A stretch of 63,349 nucleotides of DNA, the filler included, from Reticulomyxa filosa (lineage: Eukaryota > Protista > Foraminifera), in assembly GCA_000512085.1 (NCBI GenBank). It is 21 parts of 21 records of this genome, joined end to end, with 100 filler letters (N's around TTAATTAATTAA, not from the genome) between each part and the next. Parts side by side here need not be neighbours in the genome. Positions count along the whole stretch, not along the records: positions 17,460 to 26,746 come from ASPP01022531.1; 20 more parts are not named here. One strand, 5' to 3'. A model generated the notes under the pieces. That model did no database searches, was not told the DNA's origin, and worked only from the letters and a program-made list of their open reading frames with translations. Of this stretch, positions 2,891 through 26,746 are shown piece by piece (the first letter of the stretch is position 1; every line of letters starts with the position of its first letter). Position numbers and translations under genes: made by a program.

Positions 2891-4622
2891 TCAAATCATT
2901 ACACCATTTTTGTAAATGCACTTTTTCACTAACATATTTTAGATGCAAGCTATATGGTATCTTTTGAAGAACAAAGAGGTTCAATAGATAAACTTCTGTC
3001 TCTTTTTTAAAAAATTAGAAAATATAATGTGCTATCACATTTTGCTTTATTTTATTTAACATAGCTGTGAAAAGAATATACGCTTATTATGATATCTTCT
3101 TTAAACGAAAAAATACTGTCTTTGATTCAACTTTTACTAAAACTAAACTTACAAATAAAAGTGAAATTAATCTTTATAGCACTTACAATTTTAATCAAAA
3201 TTTAAGTAATAGTCCATCACTGAAGTTTACCAAAAAAAGAAAGTAAAGTAAATTGTGTCAATTTCAATAACTGAAGCGATCTTCATTTTTTTCAAGAAAT
3301 TATATTTTTTTAATACATTTCAAACATTACTAATCAATATGAAAAAGTTGGTATTTCAAGTGCAATTTTCTTCATTAAAATTATATAGATGGTAAATAAA
3401 ATAAATATGATAATACATTACAATAAAGAAATTTGTGTCGTCATTGCATTCCATGCAGATAATGTTATAATCGGTGTGTAAGAAAGTATTTAAAAAAATG
3501 AATGCTCCGTGTTGAATGAAGAGAATTCGTTTTCTGTAAATAATAAAATAATCCTTTTTCTGGTGCTTTGATGATGAATGGAAAAAGAACAAAGTGTTAT
3601 CATATTTATCACTCTGTTTGAAGAAAATTTTTACAAAAACATGTACATTAACATTGTAAACATGTTTCCAACGTTTTATTTCTTCAAGACAATAAAAATT
3701 GAAGCCATTCCACTGTTGAATGAAAGGACATGCCAGAATGGCCCGAAATGTTTATATCTTTGTAATAAAACTATACGATTTCTTTTTACAAATTGAACAC
3801 TCATTATTCACAGTCATCTATACAAGTGAAGAAATACAGTAGATTGCAAAAAAATGAATCAAACGGAATAAATAAGAAAATATTCGACAAACCGTTTGAA
3901 GTTTAAAAAAATAACAGTGGAACAACGCCAAGGAACTTCTTTTTTGGCAAATAAATATGTTCATGAAATATCAAATGCAAAATTTATCAACTCTGTTATG
4001 ATCAAAATGCATTCTTCATTATGTAATTATAGAATTTTCGCTTCTTTAAATGCTTTAGATTAAGTTGAATATTATTAAATAACCCAATCATTATAATAAA
4101 TTCGTCATCTTTTAATAATATTCTCATTGCTGATGTTCCATCTGCTATGATTCACTATTGTTTGGGTAAAATTTTCATAAAGGATCAATATAATTCATTT
4201 CAAATTACATGTATTAATTAAAAAACTGTGCTTACTTTGCTGTCTGCCTTTCAAATTTAGGATACCTTTTCCCTTTCTTCATTTATTGTTCTTTAAAAAG
4301 ATTCAATAATAATAGAAAAGATATATATCATGAATTAATACAAAGACAATTGTGATCAATACTATACAAAAAACACAATACTTGAAATATCTTGCAATTT
4401 ATTTTTCTATTTGGATACAATTTTTATTTATTATGCTTTTGAATTCTTTAAAAAACATTGAAAGCAACTTTTTGAATATTTTTAAACAACAAAGCAAAAA
4501 TAGTACACATCTTTCAATACTCGAATTCAATCAAAGCAAATAAGTTTAATATCAACTTACTTTTCTTTTAATCAAACTTTTCAATAAAAATACTTTCATT
4601 TCTTGTTCAACAAAAAAGTAGA

Positions 4623-5104
4623 TTATCCCCAAATACGAATGGGACCTTTGCGTGAGCCATAACTCAAATTCAAATCATATGTAACATTTTTTGTCTTATC
4701 TATCTTTTTCAATGCAATAAATTTAAGACAATATATTCCATTATCTTCTTTATCTCCTTTGATCATATACAATTCATTCTTATTTGATCGAATATCCCAA
4801 AATTGAATTGTATTATCATATGATCCAGAACATATCACATTCGAATTACAAATACTATTCTTTATTACAAATGGTGAATATTCAACAGCATTCACATAAC
4901 TTGCATGTCCATTGAACACTTGAATTTGTTAACAAGATCGAATATCCCACAAACGAACACGTTTATCATCTGATCCAGATAATATTGTATTCACTAGTTC
5001 ATTTAATCCATATTTTACACTATTACATAATTTGTATGTCCTTTGAATACATTGAATTGTTTTGTTGTTTCAATATCCCATATTCGAATGGTATTATCCA
5101 ATGA
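4623..5104 (-). CDS. WD40-repeat protein, C-terminal part (in-frame stop and frameshift; likely pseudogene)
   Basis: FNGHASYVNAVEYSP...ICSGSYDNTIQFWDIRSNK...GPIRIWG. The upstream repeat contains a TAA (~4929) and a frameshift. Truncated by the contig edge. Confidence 0.85.
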
Positions 5105-17459: not shown

Positions 17460-20400
17460 TTCTGGATTATTGTAAAATTTATATAACAAATTTTCTGACG
17501 ATACAATACGTGTCACCAAAAACAATTGAGGGATAGAACTATTGGTCGGACTATGTTCCTCTTTAATTTCGCGATCGATTTCTTCTGTTGGAGCAGGAGA
17601 TAATAGCGCTTTTTGCACTGAATTAGACTTTTTAAATTTGTTCAAAAATTGAAGGTAATGAGTTTCAATATCTTTTTCAAATTTCTCAATGCTTTGTGAA
17701 TTAACTTCGTCCATTTCATGAGGATACGTCTTGTTGAGCCACTGTGGAAGTCCACAAAACCAATCATGTAATGCCACACAAAGGAGCTCCTCCTTTATGA
17801 TCGTCATTTTCGATAACAACAAAAATCTGCCTTTTGTTTCTTTCCACAAACTAGACTCTTGCCCTTTCGAATTACTTATGTTTCTCAGCAACATTGTCAA
17901 AGAGTTCAATAATAATAATAATGTACAAGTTATTGGGGATATTTCTTCAATCTGCTTTTCATCTTTTTCGTTGCTATTTTATGACAAATATTTTTTTTTT
18001 GCAATCCATAATTTCAGTAAAATAAATCACAGATACATAAATGTGCATTATAACTCCTAACACACCTGTTGGCAATTTGTATATCTGCTTTTTCTTCTAT
18101 CATGGGCTCAGTATTGTCAATCATTGTGTCGCACCATGGGTCTGGACATTTTAGCACTTTTCGATTGGGTTGGTATTCTTTCACAAAGAAGGGATGCCGA
18201 TTTCGACAATAACAAGTTATAAATGTAGTTTTTGTTGCTTCAGTCTTTAATCGCTCACCTGGCTTGCGTTGTTTTTCAAATTCTTTGGGCTCATTCAACA
18301 AAAATTTAAACGGGTTTTCTGTGGAGAAAAAGAATAAACATTTAATACATTCAGATTTGAATTATCCCTTTTTGCAACAGACAAAGACAAAAAATTGGAC
18401 TATCTCTCCTAACTTTTCATGATCTGAAGGACTCCAAACCAATGAAAAGAGAGACGAGCAATGGCCTCATCGGTTGTATCGCTAAAATTTGACGACAGAA
18501 ACTTTGATTTTGGAGATAGCGACAACAATTTTCCAATGCAAGTTTCTTCCACTTGTGAAGTCATGAAATTCAAGTTTTGCAGGTACTCGAATATTTCTAT
18601 TTTTGTGTAAAAGATATTGAAAAAAATAATGTACTATCTCTTGGATGACATAATACATATAAATTTCTATATATGCATATATGTGTATATACGAAATACA
18701 TCAAGACACAAACTGGATAAACCCTTAGAATCCTCAGAATTGTTAGATAAAGCGCTCGATATTGATAGTGCTGCAGTTAACAAAGGAGGAATATCTTGTT
18801 TGTCGCCAGTGTAACAATTGTAGTTATTTGAAATTAGCTTTTGTTTGAAATACTTGAATTTTTTTCCAAAGGTATCATTGAATGGCTGCGAAAAATATTC
18901 GCGACGAGGTTGCTTCAATTGAGAAAAAACGTCGGCATTAGCGAATAGTAGAAAGTCCGTTTGAATCCATTTTTGGGAGAAGAATGCATGAGTCCAATCC
19001 ATATTTTTTAACATGCAACATTGTTTAATGAACCATATGTGTAAGTAATACTCATACTCATTCCATTTTTCGTCAAAATTTTTATTTTCCTGGAAATAAG
19101 TCAAATCCTTGCGAATCTTTTCTAGATGTGATCGGAATGTTGTATCTTCAGATGGATGCTCCAACACTACCATTTTTTTGGTCAAGGATAAAATATGTTT
19201 GGCCAGTTGTACTTTCAATTGTGAGACGACAGAGATCTTTTGATCTCGAGTACGAACTAATCGGTCTAGTGGAGATTCCTTAGTCTCTGCATTGGCATAT
19301 AATTTTTCGTTTACTCGATTCAGCATAAGATGTAACTCGGGGGAATCGTCAAAAATATGTGTCCATTTGTTCTCTACAAGTACTCTCAAAGCTTGTAACT
19401 TGAGCAAAGACTGGCATGAAGAGACGCGGATAAAGTCTTGAGGTTTAGAAAATATTATTTTAAGGACATATTGAAATACTTGTCCATTGTTTTTATCATA
19501 TACATCTTCTACTGTTTGGATAACATGTAACAAATCACGAATGAAATACAGACACGTCTGCGTCTCTGAGCCAGGGGTGATGATATGTTTGGTAGCAGAC
19601 TTAATAATCTCGGGGATAACATTGCTATCCTTTAAAAATCCATGTTTTACCAAATCCAGCATAGTAGCCAGGTCTTGGTTTTGATTAATTGTTGTTGTGG
19701 TAGAATTGTCCTTTCTCATGTGTTTGATTCCAAGAGTTTTCATATGAAGTTGTCGACATATGACCAAAAATTCTGTATGCATTTCTTCTTTTGGAGATGG
19801 CTGTTGTCGTAAGAACTTGAGGATGGCCTTTGTTGCATCACACGCAATATCCATTTTGGCAATGAATTCTGATTCTCCCTTTTGTGGGACATCTGTCAAG
19901 ATATACTTCGATAATATACATGACACATTGACTAATTTATTTAATGGCAATACCTCATCCGCTGATAATCCCTTCTTGAGATTTAACAATACAGTCTCAT
20001 CGTCGCAAAGAGATAAGAAGTGGACATACTTGGTGATAATAGATTTGAAATAATAGAAGATTGTCTCGATCAGTGGAATGCTTATTTCTTCATTTTGCAC
20101 GGTCAACTTGACCAAACAAAATACAATGCCTTTGATAATATCAGTTAATTGATCGTCCTCTTTCACTGACAAATACATATGAAAATTGCCACGAATCACA
20201 TCTTTTGCATAAAATTCACAATTTTCAGGACTGCATTCGGTTAACAGTTGAAGAGATTTTCCGTCTTCTTTCAAACTTTTGTTTAAATAATTAGAACCCT
20301 GCAATATCATGCCATTAGTTGCAACTTCGTTGTCATAGTCACTTCTTTTCGATTTGGATTTAACAAACGCTCCAAGTGCCTTATGACACCAAATGTGAAA

Positions 20401-23400
20401 ATTCCAACTAAATGGAAAGTCTGCTCGATAACTCACTTTCACTTTGCAAAGATGCAATTCTTCGTCAGATAATTCACCTTTATCGAATAATGGAACCAAC
20501 CGGTCATTTTCTGCACTTGCTACAAAAATATTTATCAATTGCTTGTTTTTATTTTTCATTGCCCAAAATATCGTCTTTGTGTATTTGATTATTGTTATTC
20601 CACATTTTTATATTTGTGGGAACAGCACAAACAAACAAAACATGTCAATCATACAATTTATCCTGAGTAAAACAAACAAACTTGAAAGTAGCAATTTTCA
20701 TAAAGCGATAATAGCACTCTGGTCCATCCCAAAGTAATAATATTATTTACCATTGTCTGATAAAGTTGAATAAAGCTATGATGAGATTCGCTTGGCTTTT
20801 TTGCCAGAATTTGTTCCACTTTTTTTTTTGTCATCTCGACAATACGTTGAAAAGGGATATTTTTCTTTAACACCCATCTCAGTCGTGTAACCATCATTGC
20901 TTGGATTTCCTTGGGCAGCAAGTTCTCCTTCAACTCAAATGGGACATTGAGAGATGACGGGAATTTCAAATAAAAGAAAGCGCGTTGTACCATTTTTTGC
21001 ATCTTATTATTGCGCAGAGTGCAAAATTACAAATGTGTCAGTAATAAAACAAACAAGCAAATTACATATATGCATATACATACATGTGCGTGTAATAAAT
21101 TACAATATAAACAAAAAACAACTTGATTGAATGAAGTATCTTTATCAAGCATGGCCGTTGGATCACATGTAACCACGTTTTTCAAGTGCAAAGGTGATCC
21201 GTGAGTTAAAGAATCGACGAAAGCAATTTTCCATTTTCTATTCAAAATTTTTTCACAAATGAAGGGATTATACATTTTCCCTCTCTTCTTTTGTTTATCC
21301 GAAGGACATTGCTCCAAAACTGTGAAAAAAAGATCGGAAATGGATTTTTTTGTCCCAAAGTATTGTGAACAATGAGAACAATTGATTTATCATGTTTAGT
21401 TTCCTCCTCGTCAGCGTCATAATACAAAGAATAAGCGGTTTCGAGGATGCACTTAGTTTGGAAAAATTGTGTTAAATCTTCGCCTTTGTGCTGATATTGC
21501 AAAATAAATTGGTCTTTACTGGTACTTTCAAAAAATTCTTTCACATCTTTTTCCAAATGATTCACTTTCATGTATTCACTGACACGCTTACTACGCCATT
21601 TTCGCTGAAAGGCATTGCATTCCAAGTCGCAGGTCAGAATTAACAACATTTCTTTATTGGAATTTTTCTTTGAAGCCTTCAAAACTTGTTCCTGGATATA
21701 TGCATTTGTTGTTGAATAAAACATACAACTACTTCTTTTACATACATGCATCTATACACACATATAAAAATGAGTCTTAACAAATGTCATAAACGGTTGG
21801 CCAACGTTATCCAAATTGAGCGACGACTTTATTACCAACTCCACAATTTTGGCTGGATGTCGCAGTGAAGAGAACAATTCTAACAATTGCGTCGTATCGT
21901 CTTGTTTTGAATCTTCAGCTTGATCATCACTTGTCAAGTCTAGTTGCTGTTGTGGGTGTATATAAATGATGGCCGAAGGAATGGTGTCCGAATTGTATCC
22001 GCAAAACAACTCAGATAATTCGCTTTCTTTGGAAAGGTGATATAATTTAATCAGACACTTTTTAAAGTCTTCTGCCTTTTTAGCATTAGTTGATGACAAT
22101 GACCCGACATGAGAAAGGCATTGTCTTTCGAAGCGTCCAAAGAATGCTTTTTGCATCTTATCATAGATGACAATCAATCAAAATTTTTTTGAAAGAAAAA
22201 TTTTTTTTAATGATTAACTGAATTCTGCATATCTTGTTCGGAAACAATGACAACACATTTAAACTGCTTTACAACCATACATTCTTTGCTCCGGCTCTCC
22301 ATTGCCATCCGACAAAATTGCTCTATATAAGTGTAAATATAATAAATGTGTGCACGGATATAATTGTAAAACAAAACAAAAACATGCACACTTTGAGCAT
22401 TTTTACGATATCTTTGATTAAGCATGTCGTAAAGACATTCGTGGATCGACTTCAAATTGTATAAAACAACTTTTTTTCCAGCTTCCATGCAATTGATCAC
22501 TTTGTGCAAATGGTCATAGCTTGTCATTGTAGCCGTGTCTGATGCAAATTTACTCTCAAATAGAAATACGGTATCCTCGTATGGTAATAGATTTTGATCC
22601 AACAACAATTGCCACGAGTATGGTTTATTACATATCACCAGACAGTGCCTGCAATCCTCATCTTTGAGATTCATTTCGATACATTTCAACGATCCCCAAC
22701 GGTTCATTAATTCCAATACTCCCTCTCCTATTTCTGATTTTAATATCACAGTTAAGTATTTTTGAAAATTTTCATTTTTGCAGCCACCCAAATTTCTCAT
22801 AATACCTTCCAATGCTTCCTTAGGTAATGGGTGATGCATATGATAGCGAATTAAGGCATAGAAATCTCGTCTCCCCAACCAATTCTCTTTGCAAAGCGAC
22901 GTTTGGTCTTTTTTTGGCGACGTTTGGTCTTTTTTTGGCGACGTTTGATCTTTTTTTGGCAACGTTTGCTCGTTTTTTGACATGCTTTTGTCCAATTTGT
23001 CGAATATACGAACAAGCAATTTTATTTCATTTACTGAAAATTTTGTATGTTTAGTGTTTTCTTTCAAAATTGCATTCGCAATATTTTCAATATCAGATTT
23101 GAGATTGTTTGGGATTTGATGCACAATGACACGATTCATTTTAGCAGCGTCCAAAGGCCGGTTGGATAATGCGACAAGTGAAATTCCGGGATTTTCCAAG
23201 AGATGATGCAATACTTTCAAGGGTGAATGTTTAGAACGCTCTGCCAAACCAATTTCATCCAACAATAGCATAGGCTTAATGGCCTTATCTTCAGAATGAC
23301 GTTGTGCCTGCTCCCATCTTTCTTTGATTCCAAAGGGTTTGCTCTCTTGAGTACATTGAAAATATACAACGTGAAGAGGCTTGATCTTCAAATTGATGCC

Positions 23401-26400
23401 TTGCTCTTGAAGGTTTTTTTGCAACTCTTTAATATTTGGTTCACTCAATCTATCTTTGAGAAGTTGGAATGCTAAAGTTTTTGACGTCCCAGGGTCTCCA
23501 ACTAAAACAACTGTAAATTTATAAGAATTACATACACCCAACAACGTGAATATACATTATGTTTATATTCACATATGTATAAATACTCAAAACTGGGAGT
23601 AGTGGTCACAATACATATAAATAACATAAACAATATCTCCTCCAATGCTTCAGTTTTTGCAATGATTTCTTTATTAAGAGAATAAAATGCCTCAGAAAAT
23701 TTTTTCATTTCTTTTTTCAAAATATCCAAAAAATTTTCGGTTTTCGTCGACATTTCTTTTATATAATTCTTTCTTTCGCTTTTTTTCAATCGAAAGTAAT
23801 AGCATATTCCTAATGAAACCACCAAACATTGTTTCATACAATCGGAATTACAGTCGCCAGTAACATAGTGATTCACAAGCCAAACAAAAATTTTTAAACA
23901 TCTCTCCACTCTCTCAAGGATACCATAGCCACATCCTGTAATTGGTGCGCACAAAATGTTGAGATCGGAAAATTTGTTCGGCTATGAAGTGTGCCTCCGA
24001 GTCAAATATCGTCTGTGCATGTGTTAACTCTTTTTTCCGATCTTTGGTCATTTCTGAAATATATTGACGTTCATCTAACTCGGACAATGACCCAAACTGC
24101 CAAAGATGTGCCTTTACAGTTTGACACAAAGGAAATACTCGATACACATATTTGATCAATGGATCTTTATGATACCAGGATTTTTCCTGAAGATTATGTT
24201 TACGTTCACGATAAGGATTACAAGCTGCAATAATTTTGATCTCCTTTGGTATTGCCACTCCATCGAGGGTATGGTTGCAAATCAATTCATTGAACCACCC
24301 AATATCCGGTGAAGTATTGAATTCATCTAAGAAAAGCCAAATCTCCTTTGCGTCATGTTCATTTTCTCTTTCTTTGGATTCATTAGAATCAGTGTCGTTT
24401 GATTGTTGTTCTAACATTGTCTTGCATTTCTCCACAAGTTCACGAATATGAGTCCTTTCAATTCCTCCATGGATATCCACGGCCTCCAATTTAATATCTG
24501 CTGCGCACGCAAGATACTTAATCAGCGCTGTTTTCCCACAGCCCCTGCAATACAAAAGCAAATGAAAATAACAATCTCAAAGATATTATACACATGTATG
24601 TTATATTACAATTGCCCTCCTCTCTCTATCCCTTTCAGCTTACTCTTCACTTACGTTTCGCCCATCAACACAGTCTATAATAAAAACGTAGAATATTTCC
24701 AAACAAAAAGAGATATTTGTATTAGAAATAAAGAATTGAATGCATTTGTTTTCAATATAATGCAATACTGGGAGATCGGATCTAATATTGAGAAGGATGG
24801 CCACCATTTTCAGAACGTTATCGTAAGTCAATACATAATGTTCAAATTCTCCTTCACACAATTTCTTCTTAATTTCGCCTCTCTTTTCCATTGGGGTACC
24901 CACTGCACGGCATAATACCTCAATACGTTCTTGCTTTGTTTCAAGAATGTTTTCGGTATTTGAAATACCCATGTTTGATTTCTATTTCATCACAATTCAT
25001 TTTTCATTCCATCTATGTTTGATTACATTTTTTTTTAACAAAAAGAAATGCATGCTCATTACCCCGAAAAATAAGTCTAGCATTTTATTTGTTTCTTTCC
25101 AAGAGATAAAGACAATGTTTGCTTGTTTTAAATCTTCACGCATTTTCTTATCCACCCCATCTTCATTTGGGACCAATAATGAAAGGGATCCTTTTTGCAC
25201 ATCACAAAACTTGTATTACAAAAAAATGTTGACACAATAAAAACACTTGTTTAAATTTCAATACCGTCACGATTGATCAGATAGAATGACTCAGAGCGTT
25301 TCAGCTTTTTGCACAAGCAGAATTGAGTGTCATCTTCTTTGATGTTTATATTCGCAATAAGTTCTTGAGCAATTGCAGTTGCACATTTAGTGGCTTCCTG
25401 CTTGTATTGGAATTGATGGCTGTACACCTTCTTGTTGGTAAGATATGTAGAATTGGCTAGAATTTTGAATTGAGTGAATAGAAACTTGAAGAGAATCGTG
25501 TAATTCAAAGGATATGACCGTATAGATTGTCCAAAAGAAGACTCCATAAAACTAATCATATCTTCACGGCTTAAATGGGCGATCTTATCCGGATCAATGT
25601 CAGGTGTCTCAGGAGAAATTCTTGAAGAGGAAGAGAACAAACCCCAAAAACCTGAGTTCTCAGATCTATCGAGGAAAAAAAGGATAATAAATGAGCAAAT
25701 ATAGAGAAATAAATGTAAGAGACAAAAACAACAAAAAAATCACAACTTTGATATTTCATTTAGTTCTTTTATCCATTTAACGCAATATTGTGCCTCCTCT
25801 CCAAAGTAGAATGGATTGTTGGATTCGCTTACAGCGATTGTGGGAAAATTAGATTGGGAAATAAAGTATACAAAATGTCTTTTGCATTGCCTTTCAACGA
25901 ATCAAATTGTGATGGAATTTCAATGAAAAAGGCCATATTTGGATTCACGTGAAAACTGGAGCAATCTGTATCAATGTGTTGCAAATATAATAATTGAAAC
26001 AGGAAATCATTTATATCTCGGTTGACACAAGACGATATGTCCAAATGATAAATCACCAAAGTGTCTTCAGATGATGCTGTTTGATGCTTCTTTTTTCGAA
26101 TGTTGTCCACATTTTCTTCCAAATTCTGATCAAATTTACAGGGATGATATTGCCAAAATGTATTTACTGTCCATTTCCAATCAATAGCGCTACTGTTGAG
26201 TCTCACACAAATGTTTTCTATTTTGCATTCCTTTTGATATTTTTCAATATCTTCTTGGATTTTCCACGTTTTTCCCATTCCAATATTGTTCGACGCATAC
26301 AATTGAATAAAAGGCTTTCGATTACTTTTGTCATGCAAAAATGAACTTAGTTGTTTGGTATATAGCTCCTCTTCCACATCGAATGAGTATATGCTTTCAT

Positions 26401-26746
26401 CAAAAGTGCATTCGAGCTGAAATAGCCTCAGCACCCCAGTTACATCATTGCCCATATTGGAAGAGACCACTGCAAATAAATATTGTTTCATGCGTTGCAA
26501 TTCAGAGTGCTGCAATAACATACGCTGCAAAAGTTTGACAACTTTTGCCTGAGTTTTCTTTGCCAATTTTTCTGGCCAAACCAAACAATACAATGATGCT
26601 TGTGCACTGTCTTTTTCAAATTGCCGTGTGCATAACAATGCCCGCAATAACAAACATTCAATTTCTTCTTCTGTTGTTGTTTTTTTGCAGATTAATACAT
26701 GTTCTGCTCGTGGAATCATTCCAATTGATTTATACAAATTCAAAAT
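17460..26746 (-). CDS. RNF213/mysterin-like giant AAA+ ATPase with C-terminal RZ-like zinc finger (multi-exon, both ends truncated, several frameshifts)
   Basis: Ordered motifs: RAEHVLIC; GMGKT; spliced LPTVLMGETGCGKT; FLDEFNTS; IIAACNPYR; YRVFPL; VSLR.VERC; LVGDPGTSKT; FQCTQES; LLDEIGLAERSKHSPLKVLHHLLE; SNRPLDAAKMNR; LYDMLNQRY; FFGRFERQ; then CRNRH..KCPDPWC. Confidence 0.9.
22896..22968 (-). repeat. 21-bp in-frame coding tandem repeat (~3.5 units, PKKDQTS)
   Basis: GCGACGTTTGGTCTTTTTTTG repeated on the + strand. Confidence 0.95.

What the first reader, a model, noticed from the sequence alone, without database searches (positions are those of the whole stretch)
17460..26746. RNF213/mysterin-like AAA+ / RZ-finger machine in a protist: candidate cell-autonomous defence system
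Seen: >9 kb of exons carrying the RNF213 AAA motifs in the same order (GETGCGKT/FLDEFN/AACNPYR and GDPGTSKT/LLDEIGLAE/PLKVLH/LDAAKMNR/LYDMLNQ), then a helical region and an RZ-like finger. No RING is recognisable between them. Established: animal RNF213 senses pathogens and ubiquitylates LPS through its RZ finger, independently of the RING. Inference: a RING-less, RZ-bearing homologue in a presumably phagotrophic protist would point to an ancient AAA-RZ antimicrobial module, possibly an expanded family.
Basis: partly seen in the sequence, partly recalled or inferred. Interest (0 to 1): 0.8.

Follow-up and report, generated by a model that had tools for sequence, protein, structure and literature searches.

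The report
RING-less RNF213 relative in a foraminiferan
This piece holds about 2,500 codons from the middle of one giant gene of the amoeboid protist Reticulomyxa filosa that is a true relative of the animal immune ligase RNF213, has no RING finger, has lost the two catalytic residues of its RZ zinc finger, and belongs to a family of at least 34 copies.

Summary
The piece is a whole 9,287-bp contig of Reticulomyxa filosa (Foraminifera). Its minus strand carries one long gene that runs off both ends and that GenBank splits into five models.

- **AAA part.** AAA2, AAA3, AAA4 and the start of AAA5 match only RNF213 among solved structures (E 2e-4 to 1e-40).
- **C-terminal part.** The 1,037-residue model folds well (pLDDT 80) and matches only RNF213, on its E3 module (Foldseek E 4e-8; VIA Z 16.1 against 6.7 for the next hit).
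- **The finger.** A profile comparison places it residue for residue on the mouse RZ finger (95.5%, E 1.6e-8). The four zinc ligands are kept. The catalytic cysteine is tyrosine and the catalytic histidine is proline.
- **Paralogues.** Four of 18 paralogue fingers keep both catalytic residues, and those tested pass Pfam's RZ threshold.
- **RING.** None is found here or in two collinear paralogous loci.
- **Family.** At least 33 further copies overlap one point of the AAA4 exon, and all 17 R. filosa copies in the tree form one clade.

A defence role is inference only, and no expression data could be obtained. I rate it a new variant of a known kind, of moderate interest.

The parts
17460..26746 (-). 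Internal part (about 2,500 codons) of one RNF213-family gene. It is open at both contig ends. GenBank splits it into five models of 305, 337, 515 (RFI_25989), 295 and 1037 aa (RFI_25987).
   Evidence: Searches give the contig identity and the five models. In one search paralogue proteins bridge models 2-3, 3-4 and 4-5. In one search loci L002 and L003 are collinear with the whole length.
25832..26746 (-). Exon bearing AAA2. The P-loop NIGMGKTW is at 26287-26264 and the Walker-B-like VIYHLDIS at 26056-26033. The frame runs off the contig end.
   Evidence: only RNF213 is hit, E 2e-4. BLASTP to mouse RNF213 chain positions 1493-1766, with AGVGKS and VIFHIDIS aligned.
25254..25601 (-). Coding segment between AAA2 and AAA3. 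Its boundaries are approximate.
   Evidence: 31% identity, E 4e-14, to L002 5705-6082, in collinear position.
24769..24981 (-). Exon before the AAA3 Walker A. It ends ...IRSDLP, followed by donor GT at 24768.
24655..24674 (-). 20-nt micro-exon (TVLMGE + 2 nt) that completes the AAA3 Walker A.
   Evidence: acceptor ttatag and donor GTAAGT; the uninterrupted paralogue L003 reads PVLLMGETGCGKT.
23935..24544 (-). AAA3 exon, with Walker A GCGKT at 24543-24529, Walker B FLDEFN at 24333-24316 and AACNPYR at 24228-24208. The 3' end is approximate.
   Evidence: (RNF213 only, E 4e-12).
23594..23918 (-). Exon between AAA3 and AAA4.
   Evidence: (exon of RFI_25989).
22210..23510 (-). AAA4 exon, carrying GDPGTSKT, LLDEIGLAE, PLKVLH, LDAAKMNR and LYDMLNQ.
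   Evidence: (RNF213 only, E 5e-25).
22896..22979 (-). 21-nt tandem repeat, 4 copies (SPKKDQT-type heptads), inside the AAA4 exon.
   Evidence: In one search the near-copy L004 lacks about 60 nt here.
21245..22177 (-). AAA4 lid and the start of AAA5. These are two frames separated by a short in-frame intron around 21752.
   Evidence: the paralogue profile hits RNF213 only, E 1e-40, over mouse chain 2294-2710..
20682..21386 (-). Exons of the AAA5/AAA6-hinge region. Boundaries are approximate. 21002-20682 is the first exon of RFI_25987.
18700..20574 (-). Large helical exon, the scaffold of the RNF213-type E3 module.
   Evidence: model pLDDT 80.4; Foldseek: RNF213 only at E <= 1e-3; Z 16.1 to the human E3 module, residues 3701-4744.
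18414..18633 (-). Short helical exon before the finger. The true acceptor is probably a little downstream of 18633.
18066..18318 (-). Finger exon. The RZ-derived finger is at 18208-18104, with spacing C-x3-H-x6-Y-x8-C-x4-C-x8-P.
   Evidence: hhalign onto the mouse RZ finger, 95.5%, E 1.6e-8; alignment of 18 paralogue fingers; no Pfam hit for this copy.
17460..17973 (-). Post-finger helical exon, the start of the C-terminal domain. The frame is open at the contig end.
   Evidence: In one search the paralogue P0049 continues beyond this point.

Best explanation
The piece is the middle of one giant gene of Reticulomyxa filosa. Judged by a collinear paralogous locus, the full protein is about 4,600 residues. 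It belongs to the RNF213 family.

Shown:
- It encodes AAA2, AAA3 and AAA4 of a dynein-like ring. [quoted passage not shown]
- The rest of the ring region follows, then an RNF213-type helical E3-module scaffold, then a zinc finger that descends from the RZ finger.
- No RING is present.
- The finger keeps the four zinc ligands. Tyr replaces the ubiquitin-accepting Cys and Pro replaces the His.

Inferred:
- The protein is an ATP-driven machine that still folds and binds zinc like RNF213.
- It cannot pass ubiquitin through the RZ cysteine. It most likely works as a non-catalytic or differently catalytic member of a large paralogue set, for example as a sensor, a scaffold or a coat partner of the paralogues that keep the full RZ motif.
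- The size and fast divergence of the family fit a cell-autonomous defence role, but nothing here tests that.
For: Identity: the contig is R. filosa ASPP01022531.1.

AAA homology:
- RNF213 is the only PDB family hit by exon 1 (2e-4), AAA3 (4e-12), AAA4 (5e-25) and the AAA4-AAA5 profile (1e-40).
- The R. filosa AAA core P0077 hits named animal RNF213 proteins at E about 1e-80 to 1e-108.

One gene:
- Paralogue models bridge three of the four annotation breaks.
- L002 and L003 are collinear over the whole length.
- A Nonionella stella protein of 4,410 aa in the EukProt set carries the same AAA core.

E3 module:
- The AF2 model has pLDDT 80.4.
- All nine Foldseek hits at E <= 1e-3 are RNF213.
- VIA Z is 16.1 over 749 residues on human 3701-4744, and the next hit scores 6.7.

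Finger:
- hhalign gives 95.5%, E 1.6e-8, and places it on the mouse RZ finger.
- Paralogues P0062, P0066, P0102, P0094 and the L002 ORF pass Pfam ZnF_RZ-type at 35-44 bits against a cut-off of 27.
- All 18 paralogue fingers keep the four ligands, and 4 of 18 keep both Cys and His.
- The RZ residue roles come from PMC11549300.

No RING. Pfam finds a RING in mouse RNF213 but in none of the foram proteins scanned.

Not a dead gene: the frames are open, dN/dS is 0.41-0.47 in the large exons and 0.12 in the finger exon, and the paralogues have no stops.

Expansion: 33 further models, all under 92% identical to each other, overlap one point. The R. filosa copies form one clade.
Against: - No RNA evidence for this gene. 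No sequencing run was listed.
- The link between annotated models 1 and 2 rests on collinearity only.
- The E3-shell part has no sequence-level match to RNF213. A 261-residue sub-fragment folded alone gave only generic helical matches. The fold match therefore depends on the whole model and on the finger-proximal part.
- dN/dS near 0.45 is relaxed and also fits young duplicates drifting apart.
- Any statement about defence, coat formation or partnership between paralogues is inference from animal RNF213.
Confidence: 0.8

Rival explanations
1. This copy is a decaying or functionless duplicate. After duplication it lost the catalytic RZ residues and is drifting.
For: Cys became Tyr and His became Pro in the finger. 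dN/dS is 0.4-0.5, which is relaxed. There are many near-copies, one of them 94-95% identical including introns. No expression data exist.
Against: About 2,500 codons are open in a 34% G+C genome, one exon alone being 646 codons. The Walker A and B motifs are intact. The same degenerate pattern, with all four zinc ligands kept, recurs in at least eight diverged paralogues. The finger exon has dN/dS 0.12.
Confidence: 0.1
2. It is a working RNF213-family machine whose role is ordinary cell biology, such as lipid droplets or membrane and cytoskeletal traffic in the reticulopodial network, not defence.
For: Nothing in the sequence points to microbes. Animal RNF213 is also tied to lipid droplets (reviews found).
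Against: More than 30 fast-diverging paralogues is unusual for a housekeeping function. RNF213 expansion in bivalves has been read as immune remodelling (PMC9993606).
Confidence: 0.3
3. The AAA part is a midasin- or dynein-type ATPase, or the C-terminal exons belong to another gene. These are the reader's own refutation cases.
For: Pfam gives only weak generic AAA and AAA_5 hits. GenBank annotates five separate genes.
Against: No midasin or dynein chain appears in any PDB sequence search or in the Foldseek search at E <= 1e-3. Only RNF213 does. Paralogue models and two loci tie the parts together.
Confidence: 0.02

Closest known systems
Vertebrate RNF213 (mysterin), human and mouse (PDB 6TAX, 7OIM, 8S24, 9JWG)
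   Same: Order of AAA2-AAA3-AAA4 with the same signature motifs. Walker A and B in AAA3 and AAA4. Helical E3-module fold. A finger at the RZ position with the same four zinc ligands. The post-finger helical domain.
   Different: No RING. The finger has CxxxxC instead of CxxC and lacks the nucleophile Cys and the base His. About 28-35% identity in the AAA core and none detectable in the E3 shell. Dozens of paralogues. The N-terminal third is not in the piece, and the paralogue L002 N-terminus has no detectable similarity.
Canonical-RZ paralogues of R. filosa (ETO35633.1 + ETO35632.1 'ring finger protein' on ASPP01001449.1; the locus on ASPP01000760.1; UniProt 'RZ-type domain-containing protein' X6LXB7 and X6P5R4)
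   Same: Collinear over the whole length, also without a RING, same intron-poor AT-rich gene type.
   Different: They keep C-x3-H-x6-C-x8-C-x4-C-x8-H and pass Pfam ZnF_RZ-type. The window copy lies in another subclade and fails the Pfam model.
Invertebrate RNF213-like expansions (bivalves, gastropods, flatworms, rotifers)
   Same: Multi-copy RNF213-type AAA cores. Language-model leads point to RZ-bearing clusters without a RING.
   Different: They lie on the animal side of a 100%-supported branch. At least some mollusc clusters carry a RING.
ZNFX1
   Same: It shares the RZ-type finger.
   Different: ZNFX1 is an SF1 helicase with NFX1-type fingers. Nothing of that kind is in the piece.

Membership tests
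RNF213 family | Dynein-like AAA ring in which AAA3 and AAA4 carry Walker A and B, with RNF213-specific signature motifs in the same order | tested here: met
   only RNF213 is hit, and AAA2 through the start of AAA5 is collinear. AAA1 lies outside the contig. AAA5 and AAA6 are supported by collinearity and length only.
RNF213 family | Helical E3 module following the ring | tested here: met
   Foldseek E 4e-8, RNF213 only; VIA Z 16.1 on human 3701-4744. There is no sequence-level match for the shell, and a sub-fragment folded alone was uninformative.
RNF213 family | C3HC4 RING domain inside the E3 module | tested here: not met
   No RING pattern in any frame of the piece or of L002 and L003. No RING Pfam hit in the foram proteins, while mouse RNF213 gives one. 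A RING on a missing exon outside the contig cannot be fully excluded, but the paralogue loci cover that interval.
RNF213 family / RZ-type zinc finger (Pfam PF20173) | Four zinc ligands with spacing C-x3-H...C-x2-C | tested here: met
   C, H, C and C are aligned on the mouse ligands. The spacing of the last pair is x4 instead of x2 in all R. filosa copies.
RNF213 family / RZ-type zinc finger (Pfam PF20173) | Catalytic Cys (human C4516) and His (human H4537) | tested here: not met
   Tyr and Pro stand at these columns in the window copy, and it gets no Pfam hit. The feature is met in paralogues P0062, P0066, P0102 and the L002 ORF.
RNF213 family | N-terminal stalk with a CBM20 domain | not testable with these tools
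   This part is outside the contig. The 1,719-aa N-terminal ORF of paralogue L002 has no Pfam or PDB sequence hit.
RNF213 family | Ubiquitylation of LPS or pathogen surfaces, and coat formation | not testable with these tools
   This is a biochemical and cell-biological property.
ZNFX1 family | SF1 helicase core plus NFX1-type zinc fingers | tested here: not met
   No such Pfam hits. The ATPase modules match RNF213 only.
Midasin / dynein | Best sequence or fold match of the AAA modules and the tail | tested here: not met
   Neither appears at E <= 1e-3.

The most novel reading that the evidence does not exclude
Foraminifera carry a diversified, RING-less RNF213 arsenal. Members with a catalytic RZ finger and members with a zinc-binding but non-catalytic finger, such as this one, co-assemble on intracellular microbes. 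On this reading AAA-RZ machines are a cell-autonomous defence that predates animals, and the RING is a later animal addition.
Probability: 0.2. Interest if true: 0.8.

Novelty: new variant of a known kind. Interest (0 to 1): 0.55.

Why it matters
RNF213 is studied almost only in vertebrates, as the Moyamoya disease gene and as the ligase that ubiquitylates bacterial LPS through its RZ finger. I found no paper in the searchable library that links RNF213 to protists or to Reticulomyxa.

A clear RNF213 family in a rhizarian fits the biochemical finding that the RZ finger, not the RING, does the work. It also suggests that the AAA-plus-RZ core is older than the RING. The family lacks a RING throughout, as far as sampled, and has a canonical RZ finger in some members.

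The split into catalytic-type and ligand-only fingers within one genome is a natural experiment on what the finger does besides catalysis. The expansion to more than 30 copies resembles immune gene families.

Public databases already label some paralogues 'ring finger protein' or 'RZ-type domain-containing protein', and the defence role is untested. The value today is that of a well-founded lead.

Tried and rejected
- The first word search timed out. A repeat worked.
- One Pfam call exceeded the size limit and was resent with fewer proteins.
- No sequencing run was listed. Read laying was therefore not used, and splicing and expression are untested.
- Pfam on the window's exons gave only weak generic AAA hits and no RZ hit.
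- phmmer of the 646-aa exon, phmmer of the finger exon, and a 7-sequence profile of the C-terminal family found nothing meaningful in the PDB.
- hhalign of the family profile against the mouse E3 shell and RING region found nothing.
- I tried to bracket the place where the RING would sit by folding residues 280-540 of RFI_25987 alone. It gave only generic helical matches, Z at most 7.3, with no RNF213 among them. The RING site is therefore not localised.
- The ESM Atlas shape search with the 1,037-residue model gave TM at most 0.22.
- My first dN/dS run used the wrong frame and was discarded. One search is the valid run.
- I built no joined full-length spliced model of the window gene and sent none to any tool. 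The work was done exon by exon, by reference, and with the spliced GenBank models that the search tools returned.
- Rejected: midasin or dynein, ZNFX1, and separate genes for the AAA and finger parts.


Full report
**What the piece is.** Only 17460-26746 is genome. A word search with the largest AAA exon returned a 97%-identical protein, RFI_25989 of Reticulomyxa filosa, on a contig of exactly 9,287 bp. A look-up identified the contig as ASPP01022531.1 of assembly GCA_000512085.1. G+C is 31-37% throughout. All long open frames lie on the minus strand. GenBank annotates five same-strand models of 305, 337, 515, 295 and 1,037 residues.

**The observation.**
- GETGCGKT is formed by splicing. A 20-nt micro-exon (24674-24655) with a good acceptor and a GTAAGT donor joins the exon that starts at 24544. 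An intron-free paralogue reads PVLLMGETGCGKT at the same place.
- No RING-like cysteine/histidine pattern occurs in any frame.
- The Cys/His finger lies at 18208-18104.

**One gene, not five.**
- Paralogue protein models from other contigs align across the breaks between models 2-3, 3-4 and 4-5.
- Two paralogous loci are collinear with the window gene from its first exon to its last: L002 on a 19-kb contig and L003 on a 10.5-kb contig. This includes the poorly conserved segment at 25601-25254.
- In L002 six consecutive same-strand models add up to about 4,600 residues. By that measure the window lacks about 1,500 codons upstream and about 500 downstream.
- The EukProt set for the foraminiferan Nonionella stella holds a 4,410-residue protein with the same AAA core. 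From my own knowledge that set is a transcriptome. If so, relatives are expressed as single giant messages.
- The link between models 1 and 2 rests on collinearity with L002 and with RNF213 only.

**Homology of the AAA part.**
- phmmer of single exons against all PDB chains returns RNF213 entries and no other family: AAA4 exon E 5e-25, AAA3 exon 4e-12, exon 1 2e-4.
- Exon 1 aligns with mouse AAA2, including its P-loop (AGVGKS against IGMGKT) and VIFHIDIS against VIYHLDIS.
- A profile of paralogues covering models 3-4 hits RNF213 at E 1e-40 over 410 positions, running past LYDALNQ into the start of AAA5.
- The AAA core of a paralogue (P0077) finds named animal RNF213 and rnf213-alpha-like proteins at E about 1e-80 to 1e-108 and 28-35% identity.
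- Midasin and dynein never appear.
- The Walker A and B motifs of AAA3 and AAA4 are intact.

**The C-terminal part.**
- At sequence level the 646-residue exon and a small family profile hit nothing solved.
- An exhaustive search of 1.84 billion representatives with RFI_25987 found only 55 relatives. All ten that I looked up are R. filosa.
- With these as the alignment, AlphaFold2 gave a confident, almost all-helical model: pLDDT 80.4, pTM 0.64.
- All nine Foldseek hits at E <= 1e-3 are RNF213 (best 3.8e-8). The next hit has E 0.05.
- VIA-align against the focused map of the human E3 module gives Z 16.1, with 749 residues aligned at rmsd 12.2, model 103-1037 on chain 3701-4744. The next-best Z is 6.7.
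- The lengths between anchor points agree with RNF213 to within about 70-110 residues. That is roughly the size of the missing RING, but I could not place the gap. The sub-fragment 280-540 folded alone matched only generic helical proteins, and profile comparison with the mouse shell and RING region found nothing.

**The finger.**
- The RZ finger is defined by C4505, H4509, C4525 and C4528 as metal ligands, C4516 as nucleophile and H4537 as general base (PMC11549300).
- hhalign of an 18-sequence family profile against mouse RNF213 gives 95.5% probability, E 1.6e-8 over 267 columns. It starts exactly at the finger and continues through the following helices.
- In that alignment, and in a direct alignment of 18 R. 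filosa fingers with the mouse finger, all four ligand columns are kept in every copy. The last pair is spaced x4 instead of x2.
- The nucleophile column is Cys in 6 of 18 copies, the base column is His in 4 of 18, and both are kept in 4.
- The window copy has Tyr and Pro. It gets no Pfam hit.
- The canonical paralogues score 35-44 bits against the ZnF_RZ-type cut-off of 27.
- UniProt already calls two of them 'RZ-type domain-containing protein', and GenBank calls one 'ring finger protein'.
- So the finger is a true RZ descendant, but in this copy it is a ligand-only version.

**Is the copy alive?**
- Against a near-copy (L004, 94-95% nucleotide identity including introns), dN/dS is 0.47 in the AAA4 exon.
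- Against L005 (81% identity), dN/dS is 0.41 over 622 codons of the E3-module exon, 0.12 in the finger exon and 0.40 in the last exon. The paralogues have no stops.
- This is purifying but relaxed selection. The 34% G+C content makes random open frames of this length very unlikely.

**The family.**
- 33 further R. filosa protein models overlap one point of the AAA4 exon. Each is on its own contig, and all are under 92% identical to one another. This is a lower bound, because the search saw only proteins of 247-785 residues.
- I built a maximum-likelihood tree of the AAA4 region with 40 rows. I left out the many unnamed Logan fragments and most vertebrate hits. Foraminifera, plus one environmental sequence, sit on one side of a 100%-supported branch, and animals plus nine environmental sequences sit on the other.
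- The 17 R. filosa copies form one clade (98%). Nonionella and Bolivina form another (99%). The expansion is therefore lineage-specific.
- The window copy lies in a six-member subclade (100%), apart from the canonical-RZ paralogue P0077.
- The tree is unrooted. It gives no sign that forams are nested within animals, but it does not date the family.
- Language-model look-alikes of a canonical paralogue's E3 module are RZ-bearing, RING-free clusters labelled Haptophyta, Rotifera and Mollusca. This is a lead only.

**How it most likely works.** Shown: an RNF213-type ring with two hydrolysis-competent sites, an RNF213-type E3 scaffold, a zinc-ligand-complete finger, and no RING. Inferred: the machine binds and hydrolyses ATP. 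Without a RING and without the finger's Cys/His pair, it cannot use either known RNF213 ligase route. I take it to be a non-catalytic or differently catalytic member that acts alongside catalytic paralogues. A defence role is suggested only by analogy with animal RNF213, by copy number and by divergence. RNF213 expansion in symbiotic bivalves has been read in the same way (PMC9993606).

**Novelty and verdict.** I found no paper linking RNF213 to protists, but automatic database names already flag some paralogues. I rate it a new variant of a known kind: RING-less, with catalytic and ligand-only finger subfamilies, greatly expanded, in Rhizaria. Interest is 0.55.

**Limits.** There are no expression data. 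The gene is cut at both ends. I built and searched no joined spliced model of my own. The RING site is not localised. The E3-shell homology rests on a predicted fold.

Noticed in passing
window 22896-22979: A 21-nt tandem repeat (4 copies, SPKKDQT-type heptads) sits inside the AAA4 exon between the Walker B region and the lid. The 94%-identical near-copy L004 lacks about 60 nt here, so the array varies in length between copies.
   Followed up: partly
window 24655-24674: A 20-nt micro-exon supplies half of the AAA3 Walker A. An intron-free paralogue (L003) has the same residues in one frame.
   Followed up: yes
window 19893-19919: The 27-nt 'intron' in GenBank model RFI_25987 is probably not real. 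The frame stays open through it, and paralogue P0047 keeps the corresponding residues. The acceptor chosen at 18633 also looks too far upstream compared with P0049.
   Followed up: partly
L002:17125-17829: About 2 kb downstream of the full-length paralogue on ASPP01000760.1 lies a gene with a TRAF-type zinc finger (PF02176, 31.7 bits against a cut-off of 27). In animals this domain is tied to immune signalling.
   Followed up: no
P0129 (Macrostomum lignano, UniProt A0A1I8HL83): A flatworm protein with an RNF213-type AAA core is named 'CARD domain-containing protein'. That would mean a death-fold domain fused to this ATPase.
   Followed up: no
L004 (ASPP01004912.1) against window 24067-22478: This locus is 94-95% identical in nucleotides across exons and introns. 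It is either a very recent duplicate or a divergent haplotype, and the fragmented assembly cannot tell which.
   Followed up: partly
P0234 (Nonionella stella, 4,410 aa): This giant foram relative has the AAA core and the start of the E3 module, but Pfam and pattern search find neither an RZ finger nor a RING. It may end before the finger.
   Followed up: partly
tree; P0121, P0124, P0127, P0128 against P0206, P0244: Animal sequences fall into two well-supported groups. One holds vertebrate RNF213 plus Dreissena. The other holds mollusc and flatworm sequences plus many environmental ones. This hints at an old duplication within animals.
   Followed up: no
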